DNA of 63,056 bases, counting the filler, from Octopus bimaculoides (lineage: Eukaryota), in assembly GCF_001194135.2 (NCBI RefSeq). It is 5 parts of 5 records of this genome, joined end to end, with 100 filler letters (N's around TTAATTAATTAA, not from the genome) between each part and the next. Parts side by side here need not be neighbours in the genome. Positions count along the whole stretch, not along the records: positions 28,043 to 54,394 come from NC_069007.1; 4 more parts are not named here. The stretch is one strand, 5' to 3'. The notes below the pieces were generated by a model. It was not told where the DNA came from and made no database searches. It saw only the letters and a program-made list of their open reading frames with translations. The position numbers were made by a program, and so were the translations under genes. Shown piece by piece: positions 29,412 through 53,480 of the stretch. Position 1 is the first letter of the stretch. Each line of letters starts with the position of its first letter.

Positions 29412-29680
29412 CTGTGAAGGTTTGTCTTTTACACTTTCAAAAATTAAATCAAATGTTCGTATATTTCTTTTAAGTGACAGGCTTAAACGAGCTCCAAATA
29501 TCAAATACTGACTTGGAATGAAAATGTGAACTGTAGGGAAATAATCCCTTTTATCTGAAACCCAGCCTTGACGTAAATGTCTTATTTCAGACGCATTATC
29601 TTGGTTACTTGAAACGGTAATGTATGAATCGGGAAGAAGTTCAGGAGCGCTCATAAGATTTACCATTTCACACGATTTTT
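29412..29680 (-). CDS. Exon K (269 nt, phase 1-0): N-terminal part of discoidin-like domain 2, KSCEMVNLMSAPELLPDSYITVSSNQDNASEIRHLRQGWVSD...NIRTFDLIFESVKDKPSQ
   Basis: Poly-T acceptor ttttttttcag and donor ACAG|gttagt. It matches ORF 29334-29666 and has the same phases and nearly the same length as exon I. Motifs LPDSYITVSS, R...GW and NIRTF align with exon I and the F5/8C consensus. Confidence 0.9.
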
Positions 29681-29729
29681 CTGAAAAAAAAAAAAAAAAA
29701 AGGAAGTAATAATATATCTCTCTCTCTCT

Positions 29730-30090
29730 TGTGTCATGGCATATTCATACCGTTGACAGATCATGGCTTGTTCCTCCTTCATTTATTTCTGTCTCTCACA
29801 ACATCACCCAGGTCTTTCTTGCTCTGTACATTCAATCTCTTCCTCATCCAGTCAAACAGCTTCCTTCTCTGCCTTCTTCTCACTCTCCTTCCCACCACCT
29901 CAGTCTCCACCATGGACCGTTCCATTCCATCATACTCTCTGAGAAAATGACCAACAAATCTCCACCATGGACCGCTCCATTCCATCATACTCTCTGAGAA
30001 AATGACCAACAAATCTCCACTGTCTTGCTCTGATAGTATCCATCAGCTGTCTCTTCACTTTCATCGTCTTCAACATTTCCACATACGCAT
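29730..30090 (-). mobile_element. RTE-clade LINE 3' fragment with an internal 55-bp tandem duplication
   Basis: Peptide IRARQWRFVGHFLRE...VVGRRVRRRQRRKLFDW...VVRDRNK. Duplicated unit ctccaccatggaccg...gaccaacaaat at about 29905-30015. Confidence 0.7.
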
Positions 30091-30117
30091 GTAATAATCA
30101 ATATATATATATATATA

Positions 30118-30282
30118 GGCGCAGGAATGGCTGTGTGGTAAGTAGCTTGCTTACCAACCACATGGTTCTGGGTTCAGTCCCACTGCGTGGCACCTTGGGC
30201 AAGTGTCTTCTACTTTAGCCTCGGGCCGACCAAAGCCTTGTGAGTGGATTTGGTAGACGGAAACTGAAAGAAGCCCGTCGTA

Positions 30283-30342
<60 letters not shown>

Positions 30343-30552
30343 TGTGTGTGTCTGTGTTTGTCACCCCAACATCGCTTGACAACCGATGGTGGTGTGTTTA
30401 CGTCCCCGTAACTTAGTGGTTCAGCAAAAGAGACCGATAGGATAAGTACTAGGCTTCCAAAGAATAAGTCCTGGGGTTGATTTGCTCGACTAAAGGCGGT
30501 GCTCCAGCATGGCCGCAGTCAAATGACTGAAACAAGTAAAAGAGTAAAGAGT
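30118..30552 (+). mobile_element. SINE family A, full length (tRNA-like head, central (TA)n, aagagt tail)
   Basis: ggcgcagg..tggctgtgtggtaag (A box) and gggttcagtccc (B box). More than 12 related copies occur in the window. Confidence 0.9.
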
Positions 30553-30804
30553 ATATGCATATAATAATTAATATATGAACATTTATTTATGTGTGTGTAT
30601 GCATGTATGTAAACAAAATATCATAACAAAACTTATAATGATCACAGAAAACAAAATGATAACTGATGCTATAATTTCTACAAGTATAGTCTTAAAATGT
30701 AAGAAATGGACAAGAATAATGTTTTGTTTGTAAATATCACTAATAAAAGTTCTATATATAAAGAACAGAGTTGAAGAAATGATTCATATGGTTGAATACT
30801 TTAC

Positions 30805-30858
30805 CTGTTGTAAGAGGTGTAACTGGCTGTGAAGTTACAACGAAGGAAGAAGGATATT
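30805..30858 (-). CDS. Micro-exon A (54 nt, phase 1-1): (E)YPSSFVVTSQPVTPLTT
   Basis: Acceptor ttccacattaacactttcag and donor ACAG|gtaaag. Confidence 0.85.
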
Positions 30859-31454
30859 CTGAAAGTGTTAATGTGGAAAGAGTAAGATTTCAGTTAAGTT
30901 GATGTCTTTGTGTTTTTAACTAAAATAAAGATGTGTTTATATGATAATAATTGATGAATTGTAATTGAAAAGAAATCACAGAAATAAATCATATTTAATT
31001 TTTACATTTCTATATGTTACAGTTTCTGTGAAAACATATTGCAAAGATATGAACATGTAGTGGTGCGAAATTATGGTCGCCATTAAGGAAGTACAATCTA
31101 CGCATGCACAAAGGACTTGCCTTTCCGGAAGCCCCTCGAGTGCGCATGCATAGTAAAACCAGTACTTAAAGCACTTCGCGCACTTTCTAACCCTCTCTTT
31201 AGCGCAATGCTTTCGACGTAACAACTACTTGCTCCTTTGGCATGCCTCAACGAAGCTCTTAATATCCAGATGCCGATTACAAGTTAACCAGCGGCTACCA
31301 GGCTGAATGACACAGGATTTGTAAGACCCAAGCATCACCAAAAATAAAACTTATTTTTATTATGTTGTTAATTGTTCTACTGTTTCTTAATATATAATTT
31401 TGTTGAAAGCTGATAGAGAGAGACTAACATCTCTATTGCAAATCTCTTTTTCTC

Positions 31455-50133: not shown

Positions 50134-50830
50134 GGTGCTGTGACTAAAGCCAGAGTAACAATAGAGTACTTCTGTAGACTCCGGAAAATGTGGAACTCAG
50201 AGCTGTTTGCATTTAACAAAACCATATCTCACAATGCATTTGCAATACCAGCGCTAGTACCAATATTTTGAATATTGGGACTGGACACTCGATGAGATAC
50301 ACAGCCTGAAGATCAAAACCAGAAAAGTACTGACCACTAACTGGCAACTTTCACAATCATAATGATATCGATAGGATTTATGTGAGGCAAAATGATGGAT
50401 GTAGAAGCATGGGATCAGTCATTTGAATGTCGCATTGTATCACTCAGACAACATCTGCTAAACAGTAAAGAAAGAAAGGAGTACATTCCACACATACTCA
50501 AAATTCAGAGCAACAACATCTTCACGTTTGGAGAAGAATTGCTGTGAAGACACAACTGTTTCTTGCAACTTAAAGTAAGCTGGACTGACCTACCTAAACA
50601 AGCTTGGAGGAGAAGCAAGCAGGCATAATACCAAGAAAACGCAATGAATATCCTGTGAGCTAGAGGGCAACAGCAGCATTGACAAGAAGAGTAGCCTTTC
50701 CTGGACCTGCGGTAGATACATTACATAACCACCTAGAAGCATATGCATCACACCACGCACACACTACAACTGACCAATTCCTTTCTCCCCTCCCCATTTT
50801 CACACATGCATATGTCAAGATCACCAGCAT

Positions 50831-50863
<33 letters not shown>

Positions 50864-51045
50864 GCTCCTCGTTCTTCGGTCACCGTTCTTTCTTCCCCCT
50901 TTGTTATCTCCCCCTTTTCTTAGCTCTCCTGTGTGAACTTTCTAAACTTTCTAAACTTCCTGTCCGCAGAAGCCATGATAGATCGTTGACCAGGCACTAT
51001 TCAATTTTTTTTTCTCCGTGTTTTTCTCCTTGTTTTCTCCGTATT

Positions 51046-51080
51046 CTTTCTGTTGAAGAGCGTAGCTCGAAACGTTAAAG
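51046..51080 (+). ncRNA. Minimal hammerhead-like motif with a core substitution, within a PLE-derived repeat at about 50700-51180
   Basis: cttt-CTGTTGA-a-GAGC-gta-GCTC-GAAAC-GTT-aaag. The A6 position is T. Confidence 0.4.
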
Positions 51081-51624
51081 ACTTTCTGTATTCCCGAGTA
51101 TCAAACTAATACATCCTTTTGTTGTTTACACCACCTGTCCTCGTCTGTTGTTGTTTTTTTTCGTACATTCTCCCATATATGCATTCTCTACCAAGGAACA
51201 GAAGATAGCTACTAAATACTTGATAAACAAGAGGTACAAAGATACAACCAAACCTCTACGTTGTGAAAAAAAATATCGGCTCAACTGCACCAGTAAGGAA
51301 GATATCAGCCATGCCATCAGCAACTGCTCAAAAGTATCTACGAGATACTACTACCTGCCCCTAGGGCATGCTATAATTGCAAAGACTATTTACAATGCTG
51401 TCTACAGGAAGGACTGTACTGATGTATACATCAGGGTTAATAAAATAAGTACCAGTTGAGTACTGAGTCGTTCTAATCGACTTTCCCCTTCCCCCAAAAT
51501 TTCAGGCCTTATGCCTAAAGTAGAAAAGATTATTAAGTTAAACATACAGTAAAATTAGTGTTAAATATATATAGCTGTGGATAAATTTGAAGAGCTAGTT
51601 GCAATTGTAAAAAAAAAACATGAC

Positions 51625-51779
51625 GGAGTGGCTGTGTGGTAAGTAGCTTGCTTACCAACCACATGGCTCTGGGTTCAGTCCCACTGCATGGCACCTTGGG
51701 CAAGTGTCTTCTACTATAGCCTCGGGCCAACCAAAGCCTTGTGAGTGGATTTGGTAGACGGAAACCGAAAGAAGCCTGT

Positions 51780-51812
<33 letters not shown>

Positions 51813-52020
51813 TTGTGTGTCTGTGTTTGTCGCCCCACCATCGCTTGACAACCGATGATGGTGTGTTTCCGTCCCCGTGACTTAGCGGTTCGGCAAAATA
51901 GACCGATAGAATAAGTACTAGGCTTACACAGAATAAGTCCTGGGGTCGATTTGTTCGACTAAAGGCGGTGCTCCAGCATGGCCACAGTCAAAAGACTGAA
52001 ACAAGTAAAAGAGTAGAGAG
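51625..52020 (+). mobile_element. SINE family A, near full length
   Basis: Matches 30118-30552. Confidence 0.9.
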
Positions 52021-53444
52021 TTATATATGTATTATAAACTGGTTTTCACAAAATATAAATTCCTTTAATGTAAAGTGATATACTATAGAAGATTTCATTA
52101 AATAATAGGGGATAAATATGGAAGCACATAAAAGGTTTAAATGTATTCCTTCAAAATTATATTTCAATATTTGGTTGCTATAATAAAAGAGTGAGATTTT
52201 ATAAGTATTAAACACTGGTTTTCTCAGCAAATAATTACACAAAACTTCAATACTTCAAATGTATATTTATATACCGTAGAAAAAAATTATGTAAAAATAG
52301 ATGATTAATAATATATAAAAGCCATATTTTTCAATCTGTGGTCGATTCAAGATATTAAATTAAATATGTTTCTATATAACATACCCACAACAAACTATCA
52401 GTAAATATTTTTGATTAAATCTCTTGACATCGTGTCCTGTTTTAATATCATAATGTGTTTTGATGTAGTTAGCAATCTGTGTTCCTTTCTTATCTAAAAA
52501 TACCATTTTCATCTACTTTTCTTCTCTTCATTTTAGCAAAATGTTACACCTCATATTTCATCCACAAAATATGTTGTAATTCTTCCAACTGTAGCATTGA
52601 TTATATGCATATTTATTCTTAAAAGGTCCAGATAAGTTTGGAAGCAAAATATATTGTCAGAAAAATAATTCTCCCTTTCATGACACACAACGTGTTGAAA
52701 CTCTGGTGTCCCAGGGCCCCATGCAAAAACAAGCTGAGTATGTTGAACATGTTGTTGTTGTTGTTATAAATGGGGGAAATCATTCTTCTATGATACATGC
52801 TACAGTGAGCAGCATGCTCTCTGTCTGAACCTGCCTGGATGTGTTGAGAACAAATATGCAAATGGTCTGTAGTAACGCCTGCGCATGCGTAGAATTAATA
52901 AAGCAAGCGTTTCCCGCTCAATTCATTCTCTTTCTCGCTGGCCAGCGATTGAGCATGGACGTGTGTTTAAAAGCTGTCCCTACATCTTTCGGTCTTATAC
53001 TCGACAGCTCGTTATTCTCACCTCTAAAGATGTATAACTAAAGATATGTATGTTTTACCACCTAAATAAATGTTGTTTGAGTTGTTTAGTCTGGAGTTCA
53101 GCGTTCCGTCTATTTCTTTAATTTTATAGTAGAAAGTCAGGTATACAATCTAAAGATGTATAGCCCACTTTCTACTAAAAGTCATTTCATGTCGCCCTGT
53201 AAGCAGTGCAAATAATAATGTTTCATTTGTAGATGTAATGTTTCTAAAAACATTACTCCCAAGTGAAACTTGGGTCCTTCTGCTTGTAATTAGATATAAT
53301 TCTTAAAAAGTGGGTTCGTAAGCAAGCTACTTACCACACAGCCACTCCTGCACCTATAAGCTAAAAGTTCTATCACACAATAACAAACTACATTCAGTAA
53401 TACTTTCATAATAATGACTAAACACACAGTAGAATTGTACTTAC

Positions 53445-53480
53445 CTGATGGAGTAACACCTGCTGCAGATACACTTGGTC
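53445..53480 (-). CDS. Mucin/discoidin-like gene, exon J (36 nt, phase 1-1): (G)PSVSAAGVTPS
   Basis: Minus-strand acceptor ttcccactttgttgtag and donor TCAG|gtaagtac. Length is divisible by 3, the peptide is S/T/P-rich, and it joins exon I in frame. Confidence 0.75.

What the first reader, a model, noticed from the sequence alone, without database searches (positions are those of the whole stretch)
29412..53480. Hidden 11-exon gene: discoidin-like domains linked by a mucin repeat built from micro-exons
Seen: eleven GT-AG exons on the minus strand join with matching phases and no stop into about 357 aa: GPSVSAAGVTPSV-[ENCKFMDGM...TIIGCFQRI]-TSSTAVPYSSSIQT-GSTQPSSSIGTSQPVTPHST-VHPSSIVTSQPVTPHTT-(EYPSSFxVTSQPVTxxxT)x4-[EKSCEMVNLM...DKPSQ]. 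About 1.07 kb of coding sequence is scattered over 24 kb of repeats, and eight exons are 60 nt or shorter, so ORF scans miss them and gene predictors may too. Known: PTS-rich O-glycosylated linkers with F5/8C domains occur in invertebrate gel-forming mucins and hemolectin/SCO-spondin-type proteins. Inference: this is part of a large secreted or surface glycoprotein (mucus, egg coat or immune lectin-mucin) with a beads-on-a-string architecture.
Basis: partly seen in the sequence, partly recalled or inferred. Interest (0 to 1): 0.85.

Follow-up and report, generated by a model that had tools for sequence, protein, structure and literature searches.

The report
Annotated octopus mucin-like gene segment
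The eleven small exons are real, but they are the 3' third of an Octopus bimaculoides gene that RefSeq already models (LOC106881592, "uncharacterized protein"). The gene encodes a mucin-like protein in which serine/threonine/proline-rich repeats, one per small exon, link divergent discoidin-type modules.

Summary
Observation confirmed. Eleven minus-strand exons (53480 to 29412) all have AG/GT borders and compatible phases. They total 1,073 nt, give 358 codons without a stop, and none touches an assembly gap.

The gene is not hidden. The only difference is a tandem acceptor 6 nt upstream at exon 6, which adds Ala-Ser.

"Discoidin-like" holds at fold and remote-profile level:
- Pfam finds nothing.
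- A 28-sequence family profile hits neuropilin-1 b1b2 (E = 1.4e-4), aligned from first to last cysteine.
- An AlphaFold model (pLDDT 86) matches neuropilin b1b2, CBM32, CASPR2 and factor V domains.

The domain belongs to a family across Spiralia that Pfam does not detect. It sits between PTS stretches and, in a limpet and a flatworm, inside VWD-C8-TIL mucins.

The linker is 58% Ser+Thr+Pro. It was built by tandem duplication of an exon-plus-intron unit, and all its exons are phase 1-1. Both features have precedents: F5_F8 domains in lophotrochozoan mucin-like proteins, and one PTS repeat per exon in chicken Muc13.

Function, secretion and glycosylation remain inferred. Verdict: an ordinary but well-read gene, with modest interest.

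The parts
53445..53480 (-). Exon E1, 36 nt, phase 1-1. It encodes (G)PSVSAAGVTPS and is the last unit of the upstream Gly/Ser/Pro/Thr-rich linker.
   Evidence: AG/GTAAGT borders. Matches residues 860-872 of XP_052833088.1. A 36-nt exon with the same borders is present in O. vulgaris.
48892..49154 (-). Exon E2, 263 nt, phase 1 to 0. It encodes the first two thirds of discoidin-like domain D3, starting V-ENCKFMDGM with the N-terminal conserved Cys.
   Evidence: Same length and splice sites in two O. vulgaris copies. Family alignment.
45425..45560 (-). Exon E3, 136 nt, phase 0 to 1. It encodes the last third of domain D3, ending TIIGCFQRI with the C-terminal conserved Cys.
   Evidence: A 136-nt exon with the same borders is present in O. 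vulgaris. AlphaFold model pLDDT 86 and Foldseek hits to F5/8C domains.
42961..43002 (-). Exon E4, 42 nt, phase 1-1. It encodes (T)SSTAVPYSSSIQT and starts the PTS linker.
   Evidence: AG/GTTAGT borders. Residues 1007-1020 of the RefSeq protein.
40618..40677 (-). Exon E5, 60 nt, phase 1-1. It encodes (G)STQPSSSIGTSQPVTPHST, the oldest-looking copy of the repeat unit.
38742..38798 (-). Exon E6, phase 1-1. The two acceptors are in tandem, 6 nt apart.
   Evidence: Sequence acAG|CTTCAG|TACAT. RefSeq peptide. The blind scan picks the 57-nt form.
37930..37983 (-). Exon E7, 54 nt, phase 1-1. It encodes (E)YPSSFIVTSQPVTFHST.
35334..35387 (-). Exon E8, 54 nt, phase 1-1. It encodes (E)YPSSFVVTSQPVTPQTT.
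33885..33938 (-). Exon E9, 54 nt, phase 1-1. It encodes (E)YPSSFVVTSQPVTPNTT.
30805..30858 (-). Exon E10, 54 nt, phase 1-1. It encodes (E)YPSSFVVTSQPVTPLTT.
29412..29680 (-). Exon E11, 269 nt, phase 1 to 0. It encodes the first two thirds of the fourth domain copy D4 (EKSCEMVNLM...DKPSQ). The rest of D4 lies outside the piece.
   Evidence: Residues 1130-1220 of the RefSeq protein. Aligns with the other domain copies. The last RefSeq exon (DVYTVCGV...) is not in the piece.
30620..40827 (-). Array of six duplicated exon-plus-intron units (E5 to E10). Each unit is the small exon with at least 150 nt of alignable intron on both sides. Copy spacing is 812-3,080 nt, widened by inserted interspersed repeats.
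   Evidence: Alignment A3 has 78% mean column identity over about 350 nt. Repeat families D2, D4, D6 and D7. Exons are 81-94% identical with only an in-frame 3-nt indel, whereas the flanks are 48-92% identical with many indels.

Best explanation
The region is the 3' third of an already annotated Octopus bimaculoides gene: LOC106881592, RefSeq XP_052833088.1, 1,260 aa, spread over about 158 kb. The gene encodes a mucin-like mosaic protein.

Shown:
- The protein alternates four copies of a roughly 130-aa module with Ser/Thr/Pro-rich tandem repeats.
- Each module has one cysteine at each end. It is predicted to fold as a discoidin-type (F5/8 type C, galactose-binding-like) beta-sandwich.
- In the window, one complete module (E2+E3) is joined to the start of the next (E11) by a 123-aa PTS linker made of seven small exons.
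- Six of those exons are copies of one 18-20-codon unit that spread by tandem duplication of exon plus flanking intron. SINE-like repeats later invaded the introns.
- Every linker exon, and the two-exon module as a whole, is phase 1-1.

Inferred:
- The phase 1-1 layout would let units be gained, lost or skipped without breaking the frame.
- The PTS stretches are O-glycosylated and extended.
- The compact modules bind a glycan or lipid, or bind each other. That would give non-covalent cross-links or anchoring in a secreted gel, a role like that of CysD domains in vertebrate gel-forming mucins.
For: - **Exon chain:**
- **Independent model:** the RefSeq protein has the identical joined peptide.
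- **Cross-species check:** exons E1, E2 and E3 keep their lengths (36, 263, 136 nt), splice sites and open frame in O. vulgaris.
- **PTS composition:** 58% Ser+Thr+Pro, against 21% in the module.
- **Exon-plus-intron duplication:**
- **Domain family:** 39 representatives at E <= 0.001, including chiton, limpet, mussel, rotifer, flatworm and other cephalopod proteins. Copies sit between PTS stretches. In Macrostomum (VWD x3, C8, TIL, VWC) and Patella (VWD, C8, TIL, LDLa) they sit inside mucin-type proteins.
- **Discoidin relationship:**
  - Only the two cysteines are invariant in the family alignment.
  - The family profile hits neuropilin-1 b1b2 at E = 1.4e-4, aligned from first to last Cys, and the next hits are CBM32 modules.
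  - hhalign against the neuropilin b1 domain aligns end to end at E = 8.8e-4.
  - The AlphaFold2 model has pLDDT 86.2 and pTM 0.80.
  - Its best Foldseek match is neuropilin b1b2 (E = 1.1e-5, TM 0.66). IFT25, PP25, a Bacteroides F5/8C domain, CBM32, APC10, CASPR2, retinoschisin and factor V follow.
  - A weaker model from three sequences gave the same kinds of hits.
- **Literature:** F5_F8 domains are characteristic of lophotrochozoan mucin-like proteins (PMC4948705). [quoted passage not shown]
Against: - Pfam's F5_F8_type_C model does not reach threshold on any of 28 family members. The only trace is E = 0.0027 on one Argonauta protein.
- Sequence-level links to solved discoidin domains are weak: per-domain E-values are 0.9-7.6 and the hhalign probability is 23%.
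- The RefSeq model has no evident signal peptide, no VWD, C8, TIL or CTCK domain, and no Pfam hit at all. Secretion and mucin status therefore rest on composition and on relatives.
- dN/dS between the O. bimaculoides module and its two O. vulgaris counterparts is about 1.0-1.1. This fits relaxed constraint as well as diversifying selection.
- The fourth module lacks the terminal Cys in the RefSeq model.
- No transcript data could be consulted here.
- The six assembly gaps could hide further repeat exons.
Confidence: 0.75

Rival explanations
1. The RefSeq model is only a fragment. The exons belong to a far larger gel-forming-mucin or SCO-spondin-like gene, whose signal peptide and cysteine-rich VWD, TIL, TSP1 or CTCK parts are called as separate neighbouring genes or missed. 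This refines the best explanation rather than opposing it.
For: - The model starts directly in a PTS repeat without a signal peptide.
- The next gene, 4 kb downstream on the same strand, carries TIL, TSP_1 and TSP1_spondin.
- Relatives carry the same module together with other mucin domains: TSP1-like, TIL and CTCK-like regions in a rotifer (P0039), TIL and VWC (P0034, P0009), VWD-C8-TIL in Macrostomum, and VWD-C8-TIL-LDLa in Patella.
- The last RefSeq exon gives a module without its terminal Cys.
Against: - The flanking DNA could not be read, because the gene range was too long to fetch.
- Two independent annotation rounds end the protein at the same stop.
- A tandem gene cluster is an equally good reading of the neighbour.
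Confidence: 0.35
2. The module is not homologous to discoidin/F5/8C domains. It would be an unrelated or convergent two-cysteine beta-sandwich that merely falls in the broad galactose-binding-like fold class.
For: - No Pfam F5_F8_type_C hit.
- The module is 15-20 residues shorter than typical discoidin domains.
- Foldseek TM-scores are only 0.5-0.66 with rmsd 4-7 A, and DOC/APC10, CBM16 and cupins also appear in the lists.
- hhalign probability is 23%.
Against: - The best hits by sequence profile and by structure are the same protein, neuropilin b1b2.
- The alignments run from the first Cys to the last Cys.
- The N-terminal motif C-x3-GM-x4-I-x-D-x-I-x-S and the terminal GC match the discoidin pattern.
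- F5_F8 domains are already known in lophotrochozoan mucin-like proteins.
Confidence: 0.15
3. The locus is a decaying or functionally relaxed copy inside a fast-evolving mucin cluster. It would be still open by chance and predicted by software, but not making a working protein.
For: - dN/dS is about 1 against O. vulgaris (dS 0.106, dN 0.105).
- The fourth module lacks its terminal Cys.
- The linker differs radically between the two octopus species within the 10 kb read.
- No expression data were seen here.
Against: - All ten junctions keep consensus splice signals and matching phases.
- There is no stop or frameshift in 1,073 nt, nor in the O. vulgaris counterparts.
- Exon lengths are conserved exactly between the species.
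- Structurally key residues are retained.
- Among the duplicates, exons have only in-frame indels while introns have many.
- Fast evolution is usual for mucin and lectin-like genes.
Confidence: 0.1
4. Chance: the exon chain is an artefact of picking AG/GT pairs in repeat-rich DNA.
For: None beyond the general ease of finding AG and GT dinucleotides.
Against: - The blind scan gives 7 exons on the minus strand against 0 on the plus strand.
- The repeat core occurs 6 times against 0.00 expected.
- An identical RefSeq protein exists.
- Exons are conserved in O. vulgaris.
Confidence: 0.01

Closest known systems
Lophotrochozoan gel-forming mucin-like proteins with F5_F8_type_C domains (Lang et al. 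2016, PMC4948705); Drosophila hemolectin/hemocytin as the insect relative
   Same: PTS stretches are combined with discoidin-type modules. Proteins carrying the same module in Patella and Macrostomum have VWD-C8-TIL units. The paper calls the F5_F8 domain characteristic of lophotrochozoan mucin-like proteins.
   Different: The octopus RefSeq model has no VWD, C8, TIL or CTCK domain. Its modules are shorter (about 130 aa) and are not detected by Pfam PF00754. The modules alternate repeatedly with PTS, rather than sitting as one block between VWD units as in hemolectin.
Chicken (and zebrafish) Muc13, whose PTS domain is encoded by many exons with one repeat per exon (Lang, Hansson and Samuelsson 2006, PMC1552070)
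   Same: Each small exon encodes one PTS repeat unit. The authors raise the same possibility of varying linker length by splicing.
   Different: Muc13 is a transmembrane SEA/EGF mucin of vertebrates and is unrelated in its globular domains. Here the units are 18-20 codons, phase 1-1, and their duplicated intron flanks are still recognisable.
Discoidin / F5/8 type C domains of neuropilin b1-b2, factors V and VIII (C1, C2), DDR1/2, CASPR2, retinoschisin, and bacterial CBM32
   Same: Predicted beta-sandwich fold, a Cys at each end of the domain, an N-terminal C..GM....I.D..I..S motif, and best matches by both profile and structure.
   Different: About 15-20 residues shorter, identity only 12-20%, below Pfam threshold, and ligand unknown.
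CysD domains of vertebrate MUC2, MUC5AC and MUC5B (functional analogy only)
   Same: Small compact modules that interrupt long PTS regions of mucins. This is stated from general knowledge, not tested here.
   Different: The fold is unrelated and cysteine-rich (about 10 Cys), whereas the octopus module has 2. No homology is claimed.
SCO-spondin-type mosaics (TSR, LDLa, TIL, F5/8C, CTCK)
   Same: The gene next door has TIL, TSP_1 and TSP1_spondin. A rotifer protein combines three copies of this module with a cysteine-rich C-terminal part, and its source annotates it as a TIL domain-containing protein.
   Different: No such domains lie inside the annotated octopus protein. Whether the two gene models are one gene is unknown.

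Membership tests
F5/8 type C (discoidin) domain, Pfam PF00754 | Match to the family HMM above Pfam's gathering score | tested here: not met
   There is no PF00754 hit on the window modules or on any of the 28 family members at E <= 1. One relative, from Argonauta, gives E = 0.0027 and 18.3 bits against a cut-off of 28.2.
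F5/8 type C (discoidin) domain, Pfam PF00754 | Beta-sandwich (galactose-binding-like) fold superposable on solved discoidin domains | tested here: met
   The AlphaFold2 model has pLDDT 86.2 and pTM 0.80. The top Foldseek match is neuropilin-1 b1b2 (E = 1.1e-5, TM 0.66). A Bacteroides F5/8C domain, CBM32, CASPR2, retinoschisin, factor V and DDR1 are also listed. The structure is a prediction, not an experiment.
F5/8 type C (discoidin) domain, Pfam PF00754 | Cysteines at the first and last positions of the domain, forming the end-to-end disulfide | tested here: met
   C4 and C129 are the only invariant columns among 28 family members. They align with the first and last Cys of neuropilin b1. The bond itself cannot be tested here.
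F5/8 type C (discoidin) domain, Pfam PF00754 | Significant sequence-profile similarity to established members | tested here: inconclusive
   The family profile against PDB gives neuropilin-1 b1b2 at E = 1.4e-4 for the whole chain, but per-domain E-values are 0.9 and 7.6. hhalign gives E = 8.8e-4 with probability 23%.
F5/8 type C (discoidin) domain, Pfam PF00754 | Ligand binding (glycan, phospholipid, collagen or peptide) through the loops at one end of the sandwich | not testable with these tools
   Needs expressed protein and binding assays.
Mucin / mucin-like protein (PTS domain) | Long region rich in Pro, Thr and Ser, usually in tandem repeats | tested here: met
   The linker in the window is 123 aa with 43% Ser+Thr and 58% Ser+Thr+Pro, in 18-20-aa repeats. 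The whole RefSeq protein is 42% Ser+Thr+Pro.
Mucin / mucin-like protein (PTS domain) | Dense O-glycosylation of the PTS region | not testable with these tools
   Needs glycoproteomics.
Mucin / mucin-like protein (PTS domain) | Entry into the secretory pathway (signal peptide) or a membrane anchor | tested here: inconclusive
   The RefSeq model begins MPSASSTVPSYS... with no hydrophobic leader. It ends without a hydrophobic stretch. The model may be incomplete at its 5' end.
Gel-forming mucin / hemolectin class | VWD-C8-TIL units at the N-terminus and a C-terminal cystine knot for polymer formation | tested here: not met
   There are no Pfam families on XP_052833088.1. Relatives with the same module do have VWD, C8 and TIL, and the neighbouring gene has TIL and TSP1.
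One-repeat-per-exon PTS organisation (as in chicken Muc13) | Each PTS repeat unit is encoded by its own exon, and the exons are near-identical | tested here: met
   E5 to E10 are 51-60 nt, 81-94% identical, and bounded by AG/GT in the same phase.

The most novel reading that the evidence does not exclude
The module is a spiralian-wide short discoidin family that Pfam does not detect. It would serve as the invertebrate counterpart of CysD: a lectin-like or self-associating cross-linker spaced along mucin PTS rods. In octopus, the linker between modules would be tuned within one animal by cassette splicing of phase 1-1 repeat exons. It would be tuned between species by swapping the exon array for a single long variable-repeat exon, as seen in O. 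vulgaris.
Probability: 0.2. Interest if true: 0.5.

Novelty: new member of a known kind. Interest (0 to 1): 0.28.

Why it matters
**For annotation.** A gene that RefSeq calls "uncharacterized", with no Pfam domain, can now be described as a mucin-like protein with four divergent discoidin-type modules. The same module can be recognised in "mucin-2-like" and "mucin-17-like" proteins and in VWD-containing proteins of limpets, chitons, mussels, rotifers and flatworms. A dedicated profile (alignment A4) would improve domain annotation of spiralian mucins.

**For gene structure.** The locus is a clean invertebrate example of a PTS domain built one repeat per small exon, and the duplication history is still readable in the introns.

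None of this overturns current views. F5_F8 domains in lophotrochozoan mucin-like proteins and exon-per-repeat PTS domains are both published.

Tried and rejected
- **Pfam on the spliced peptide and on each module:** no relevant hit.
- **PDB sequence search with the four octopus copies only:** nothing significant. It became informative only with the 28-sequence family profile.
- **Word-indexed homologue searches:** they returned only the octopus proteins themselves. The exhaustive representative search was needed. Six of its 39 hits were set aside as low-complexity or repeat false positives: P0011, P0014, P0021, P0023, P0032 and P0042, which include ankyrin and bacterial repeat proteins.
- **Exact look-up of the older model P0001:** not on record.
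- **DNA of the 158-kb RefSeq gene:** could not be fetched because the range was too long. The neighbours and the missing last exon therefore could not be read.
- **Last RefSeq exon and the exon upstream of E1:** searched for in the piece and absent.
- **Repeat exon core in the O. vulgaris locus:** 0 matches, and no PTS-rich small exons were found there.
- **Rfam and tRNA scans of the piece:** nothing.
- **Pfam on four intronic ORFs:** nothing.
- **Literature searches by locus and accession numbers:** no paper found.
- **Rejected ideas:** that the exons are a chance chain, and that an assembly gap interrupts a coding exon.

Full report

The piece (28043-54394) is AT-rich animal DNA with six N runs. 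Reading the borders gave eleven exons:

| Exon | Coordinates | Length (nt) |
|---|---|---|
| E1 | 53445-53480 | 36 |
| E2 | 48892-49154 | 263 |
| E3 | 45425-45560 | 136 |
| E4 | 42961-43002 | 42 |
| E5 | 40618-40677 | 60 |
| E6 | 38742-38792 | 51 |
| E7 | 37930-37983 | 54 |
| E8 | 35334-35387 | 54 |
| E9 | 33885-33938 | 54 |
| E10 | 30805-30858 | 54 |
| E11 | 29412-29680 | 269 |

- Each exon is preceded by a pyrimidine-rich tract and AG, and followed by GTAAG, GTAAA or GTTAG.
- All junctions are phase 1, except the E2/E3 junction and the end of E11, which are phase 0.
- The 1,073 nt read as 358 codons without a stop.
- The first codon is split with an exon outside the piece. E11 ends in phase 0 at a donor, so the window holds an internal stretch of a gene.

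Evidence that this is more than chance:
- The 21-nt core of the repeat occurs six times against 0.00 expected.

**2. The assembly gaps**

All six gaps lie in introns: two between E10 and E9, and one each between E6/E5, E5/E4, E4/E3 and E3/E2. No exon touches an N.

- Four gaps abut copies of interspersed repeats found elsewhere in the piece at 90-96% identity: 31641-31961, 32458-32732, 33307-33497, 39217-39330, 45946-46073 and 47051-47191.
- The other two gaps abut AT/AG microsatellites.
- The gaps therefore look like assembly breaks in repeats.

Continuity across the gaps cannot be proven from the window. The RefSeq protein joins the exons in the same order with no extra residues. It may rest on the same gapped contigs, however, so one more 54-nt repeat exon hidden in a gap is not excluded. 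The wide E9-E10 interval is the likeliest place.

**3. The gene is already annotated**

A protein search with the spliced peptide found a 537-aa octopus protein that ends exactly at E3. Its cluster holds XP_052833088.1, "uncharacterized protein LOC106881592 [Octopus bimaculoides]", 1,260 aa.

The one difference is ASVHPSS in place of VHPSS.
- That difference comes from a tandem acceptor (acAG|CTTCAG|TACAT) 6 nt upstream at E6. Both forms are in frame.
- An older 274-aa model also used E4 and E5 (read in the wrong frame) and E6-E11.
- The RefSeq gene spans about 158 kb.
- Its last exon and the exon upstream of E1 are not in the piece.

So "hidden" is not correct. The window holds eleven exons of a known but uncharacterised gene model.

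**4. What the globular modules are**

The RefSeq protein has four copies of a roughly 130-aa module. Each starts and ends with a cysteine, and the copies are separated by different Ser/Thr/Pro/Gly-rich repeats. E2+E3 encode the third copy. E11 encodes the first two thirds of the fourth.

Pfam finds nothing on the modules or on the whole protein.

An exhaustive profile search found 39 representatives at E <= 0.001, of which six are repeat or low-complexity false positives. The true hits are:
- other Octopus and Argonauta proteins;
- "mucin-2-like" proteins of the chiton Liolophura and the limpet Patella;
- a "mucin-17-like" protein of Mytilus;
- a rotifer TIL-domain protein;
- a Macrostomum VWFD-domain protein of 3,666 aa.

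In these proteins the module again alternates with PTS stretches. The Macrostomum protein has VWD x3, C8, TIL and VWC, and the Patella protein has VWD, C8, TIL and LDLa.

In a 28-sequence alignment only the two cysteines are invariant. An Ile and an Arg are nearly so, within a pattern C-x3-(D/E)GM-x4-(I/L)P(D)-x2-I ... LRP ... GW ... NV ... (A/G)C(F).

Evidence linking the module to discoidin/F5/8C domains:
- This profile, searched against all PDB sequences, hits only neuropilin-1 b1b2 below E = 0.001 (best 1.4e-4). The alignment runs from the first to the last Cys of b1. The next hits are the CBM32 modules of GH89 enzymes.
- hhalign against the b1 sequence printed in that output aligns end to end at E = 8.8e-4, but with only 23% probability.
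- AlphaFold2 with three sequences gave pLDDT 70.8. With the 28-sequence alignment it gave pLDDT 86.2 and pTM 0.80, an all-beta model.
- Foldseek against PDB ranks neuropilin b1b2 first (E = 1.1e-5, TM 0.66). IFT25, PP25/HSPC034, a Bacteroides F5/8C domain, CBM32, APC10, CASPR2 discoidin, retinoschisin, factor V and DDR1 follow. The weaker model gave factor VIII C2, neuropilin, CBM32, CASPR2 and DDR2.

I conclude that the module is a short, divergent member of the discoidin / galactose-binding-like class.

**5. The linker and how it arose**

E4 to E10 encode 123 aa with 43% Ser+Thr and 58% Ser+Thr+Pro, against 21% in the module.

- E5 to E10 are copies of one unit: (E)YPSSFVVTSQPVTPxTT in the four youngest.
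- About 150 nt of intron on each side aligns as well, with mean column identity 78% over about 350 nt.
- Exons are 81-94% identical with a single in-frame 3-nt indel. The flanks are 48-92% identical with many indels.

The array therefore grew by tandem duplication of an exon-plus-intron unit. Interspersed repeats and microsatellites then stretched the spacing to 0.8-3.1 kb.

All linker exons are phase 1-1, and the two-exon module is 1-1 as a whole. Units could therefore be added, lost or skipped without a frameshift. That is what the sequence allows, and whether skipping happens is untested. A published precedent is chicken Muc13, whose PTS domain is encoded one repeat per exon (PMC1552070).

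**6. Comparison with Octopus vulgaris**

The locus encoding the O. vulgaris homologue (L001) keeps the following:
- the exon upstream of E1;
- a 36-nt E1;
- E2 and E3 with identical lengths (263 and 136 nt), splice sites and open frames.

The module is duplicated in tandem there.

Downstream, within the 10 kb available, there is no copy of the repeat exon. Instead there is a phase-1 acceptor near 31607 followed by more than 2.8 kb of uninterrupted PTS coding sequence, (IPSATTS)n, that runs off the locus. The linker evidently turns over fast between congeners.

dN/dS between the O. bimaculoides module and either O. vulgaris copy is about 1.0-1.1 (dS about 0.11). This means either relaxed constraint or diversifying selection. 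Orthology among the module copies is uncertain, so I do not lean on this number.

**7. How it most likely works**

Shown:
- a mosaic of disulfide-capable beta-sandwich modules and PTS repeats;
- membership of a spiralian family that occurs in VWD-C8-TIL mucins.

Inferred from what is established for mucins and discoidin domains:
- The PTS stretches are O-glycosylated, extended spacers.
- The modules bind a glycan or lipid, or bind each other, so that the protein cross-links or anchors a secreted gel.

Weak points:
- no signal peptide in the model;
- no polymerising domains in the model;
- no expression data.

The gene 4 kb downstream on the same strand carries TIL, TSP_1 and TSP1_spondin. Relatives combine the module with such domains. 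The RefSeq model may therefore be a fragment of a larger mucin or SCO-spondin-like gene, to which I give about 0.35.

**8. Comparison with what is known, and verdict**

Lang et al. 2016 state that lophotrochozoans have many mucin-like proteins and that the F5_F8 domain is characteristic of them. They also describe insect hemolectin as having F5_F8_type_C domains next to a small PTS (PMC4948705). The octopus protein fits that kind.

It fails the gel-forming-mucin membership test (no VWD-C8-TIL in the model) and the Pfam F5/8C test. I therefore file it as a mucin-like protein with discoidin-type modules, a new member of a known kind.

The only fresh elements are:
- naming the modules;
- seeing that they form a family across Spiralia that Pfam does not detect;
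- documenting the exon-per-repeat array.

Interest is low to moderate.

Noticed in passing
L001:31607-34395 (Octopus vulgaris, OX597840.1): After the module exons, the + strand carries a phase-1 acceptor and then more than 2.8 kb of uninterrupted PTS coding sequence, (IPSATTS)n, running off the locus. The record's called gene here is on the opposite strand (a 645-residue product with a Na_Ca_ex Pfam hit). Its reading frame is a (DGIDVVA)n repeat, which is the reverse reading of the same tandem repeat, so it is probably an annotation artefact.
   Followed up: partly
L001:14985-22716: The discoidin-like module (263-nt plus 136-nt exon pair) is duplicated in tandem in O. vulgaris. O. bimaculoides has a single copy at this position.
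   Followed up: partly
window 45425-49154 (E2+E3) versus L001: dN/dS of the module between O. bimaculoides and either O. vulgaris copy is about 1.0-1.1 (dS about 0.11). The cysteines and core motifs are nevertheless kept and the exon lengths are identical. This is either relaxed constraint or diversifying selection.
   Followed up: partly
window 38793-38798: Exon 6 has a tandem acceptor (acAG|CTTCAG|). Both forms are in frame, so this is a possible small alternative-splicing event.
   Followed up: partly
window 30104-30555, 31641-31972, 36370-36649, 39022-39330, 40066-40428, 45946-46073, 51618-52022, 54070-54311: The introns hold many copies, in both orientations, of a SINE-like interspersed repeat of about 200-450 nt at 84-98% identity. 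It has a tRNA-like stretch (GGTTCAGTCCCACTGC), but neither ARAGORN nor Rfam calls it. Four of the six assembly gaps begin or end inside such copies or copies of a second repeat (32458-32732, 33307-33659, 47051-47372, 49748-50086).
   Followed up: partly
window 40396-40413 and 31949-31966: The older 274-aa gene model inserts a short exon (AQEWLC) taken from an interspersed repeat that is present twice in the piece. The insertion shifts from a wrong reading of E4/E5 back into the true frame at E6. It is most likely a modelling artefact, and RefSeq does not use it.
   Followed up: partly
outside the window: O. bimaculoides GCA_001194135.2, 4 kb downstream of LOC106881592: The next gene on the same strand encodes TIL, TSP_1 and TSP1_spondin domains. 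The two models may be parts of one large mucin or SCO-spondin-like gene, or members of a cluster.
   Followed up: no
window 29904-30020: A 55-nt unit is repeated 2.1 times at 98% identity in the intron just upstream of E11, next to TG, TA and TAGGGT microsatellites elsewhere in the introns. No function is suggested.
   Followed up: no
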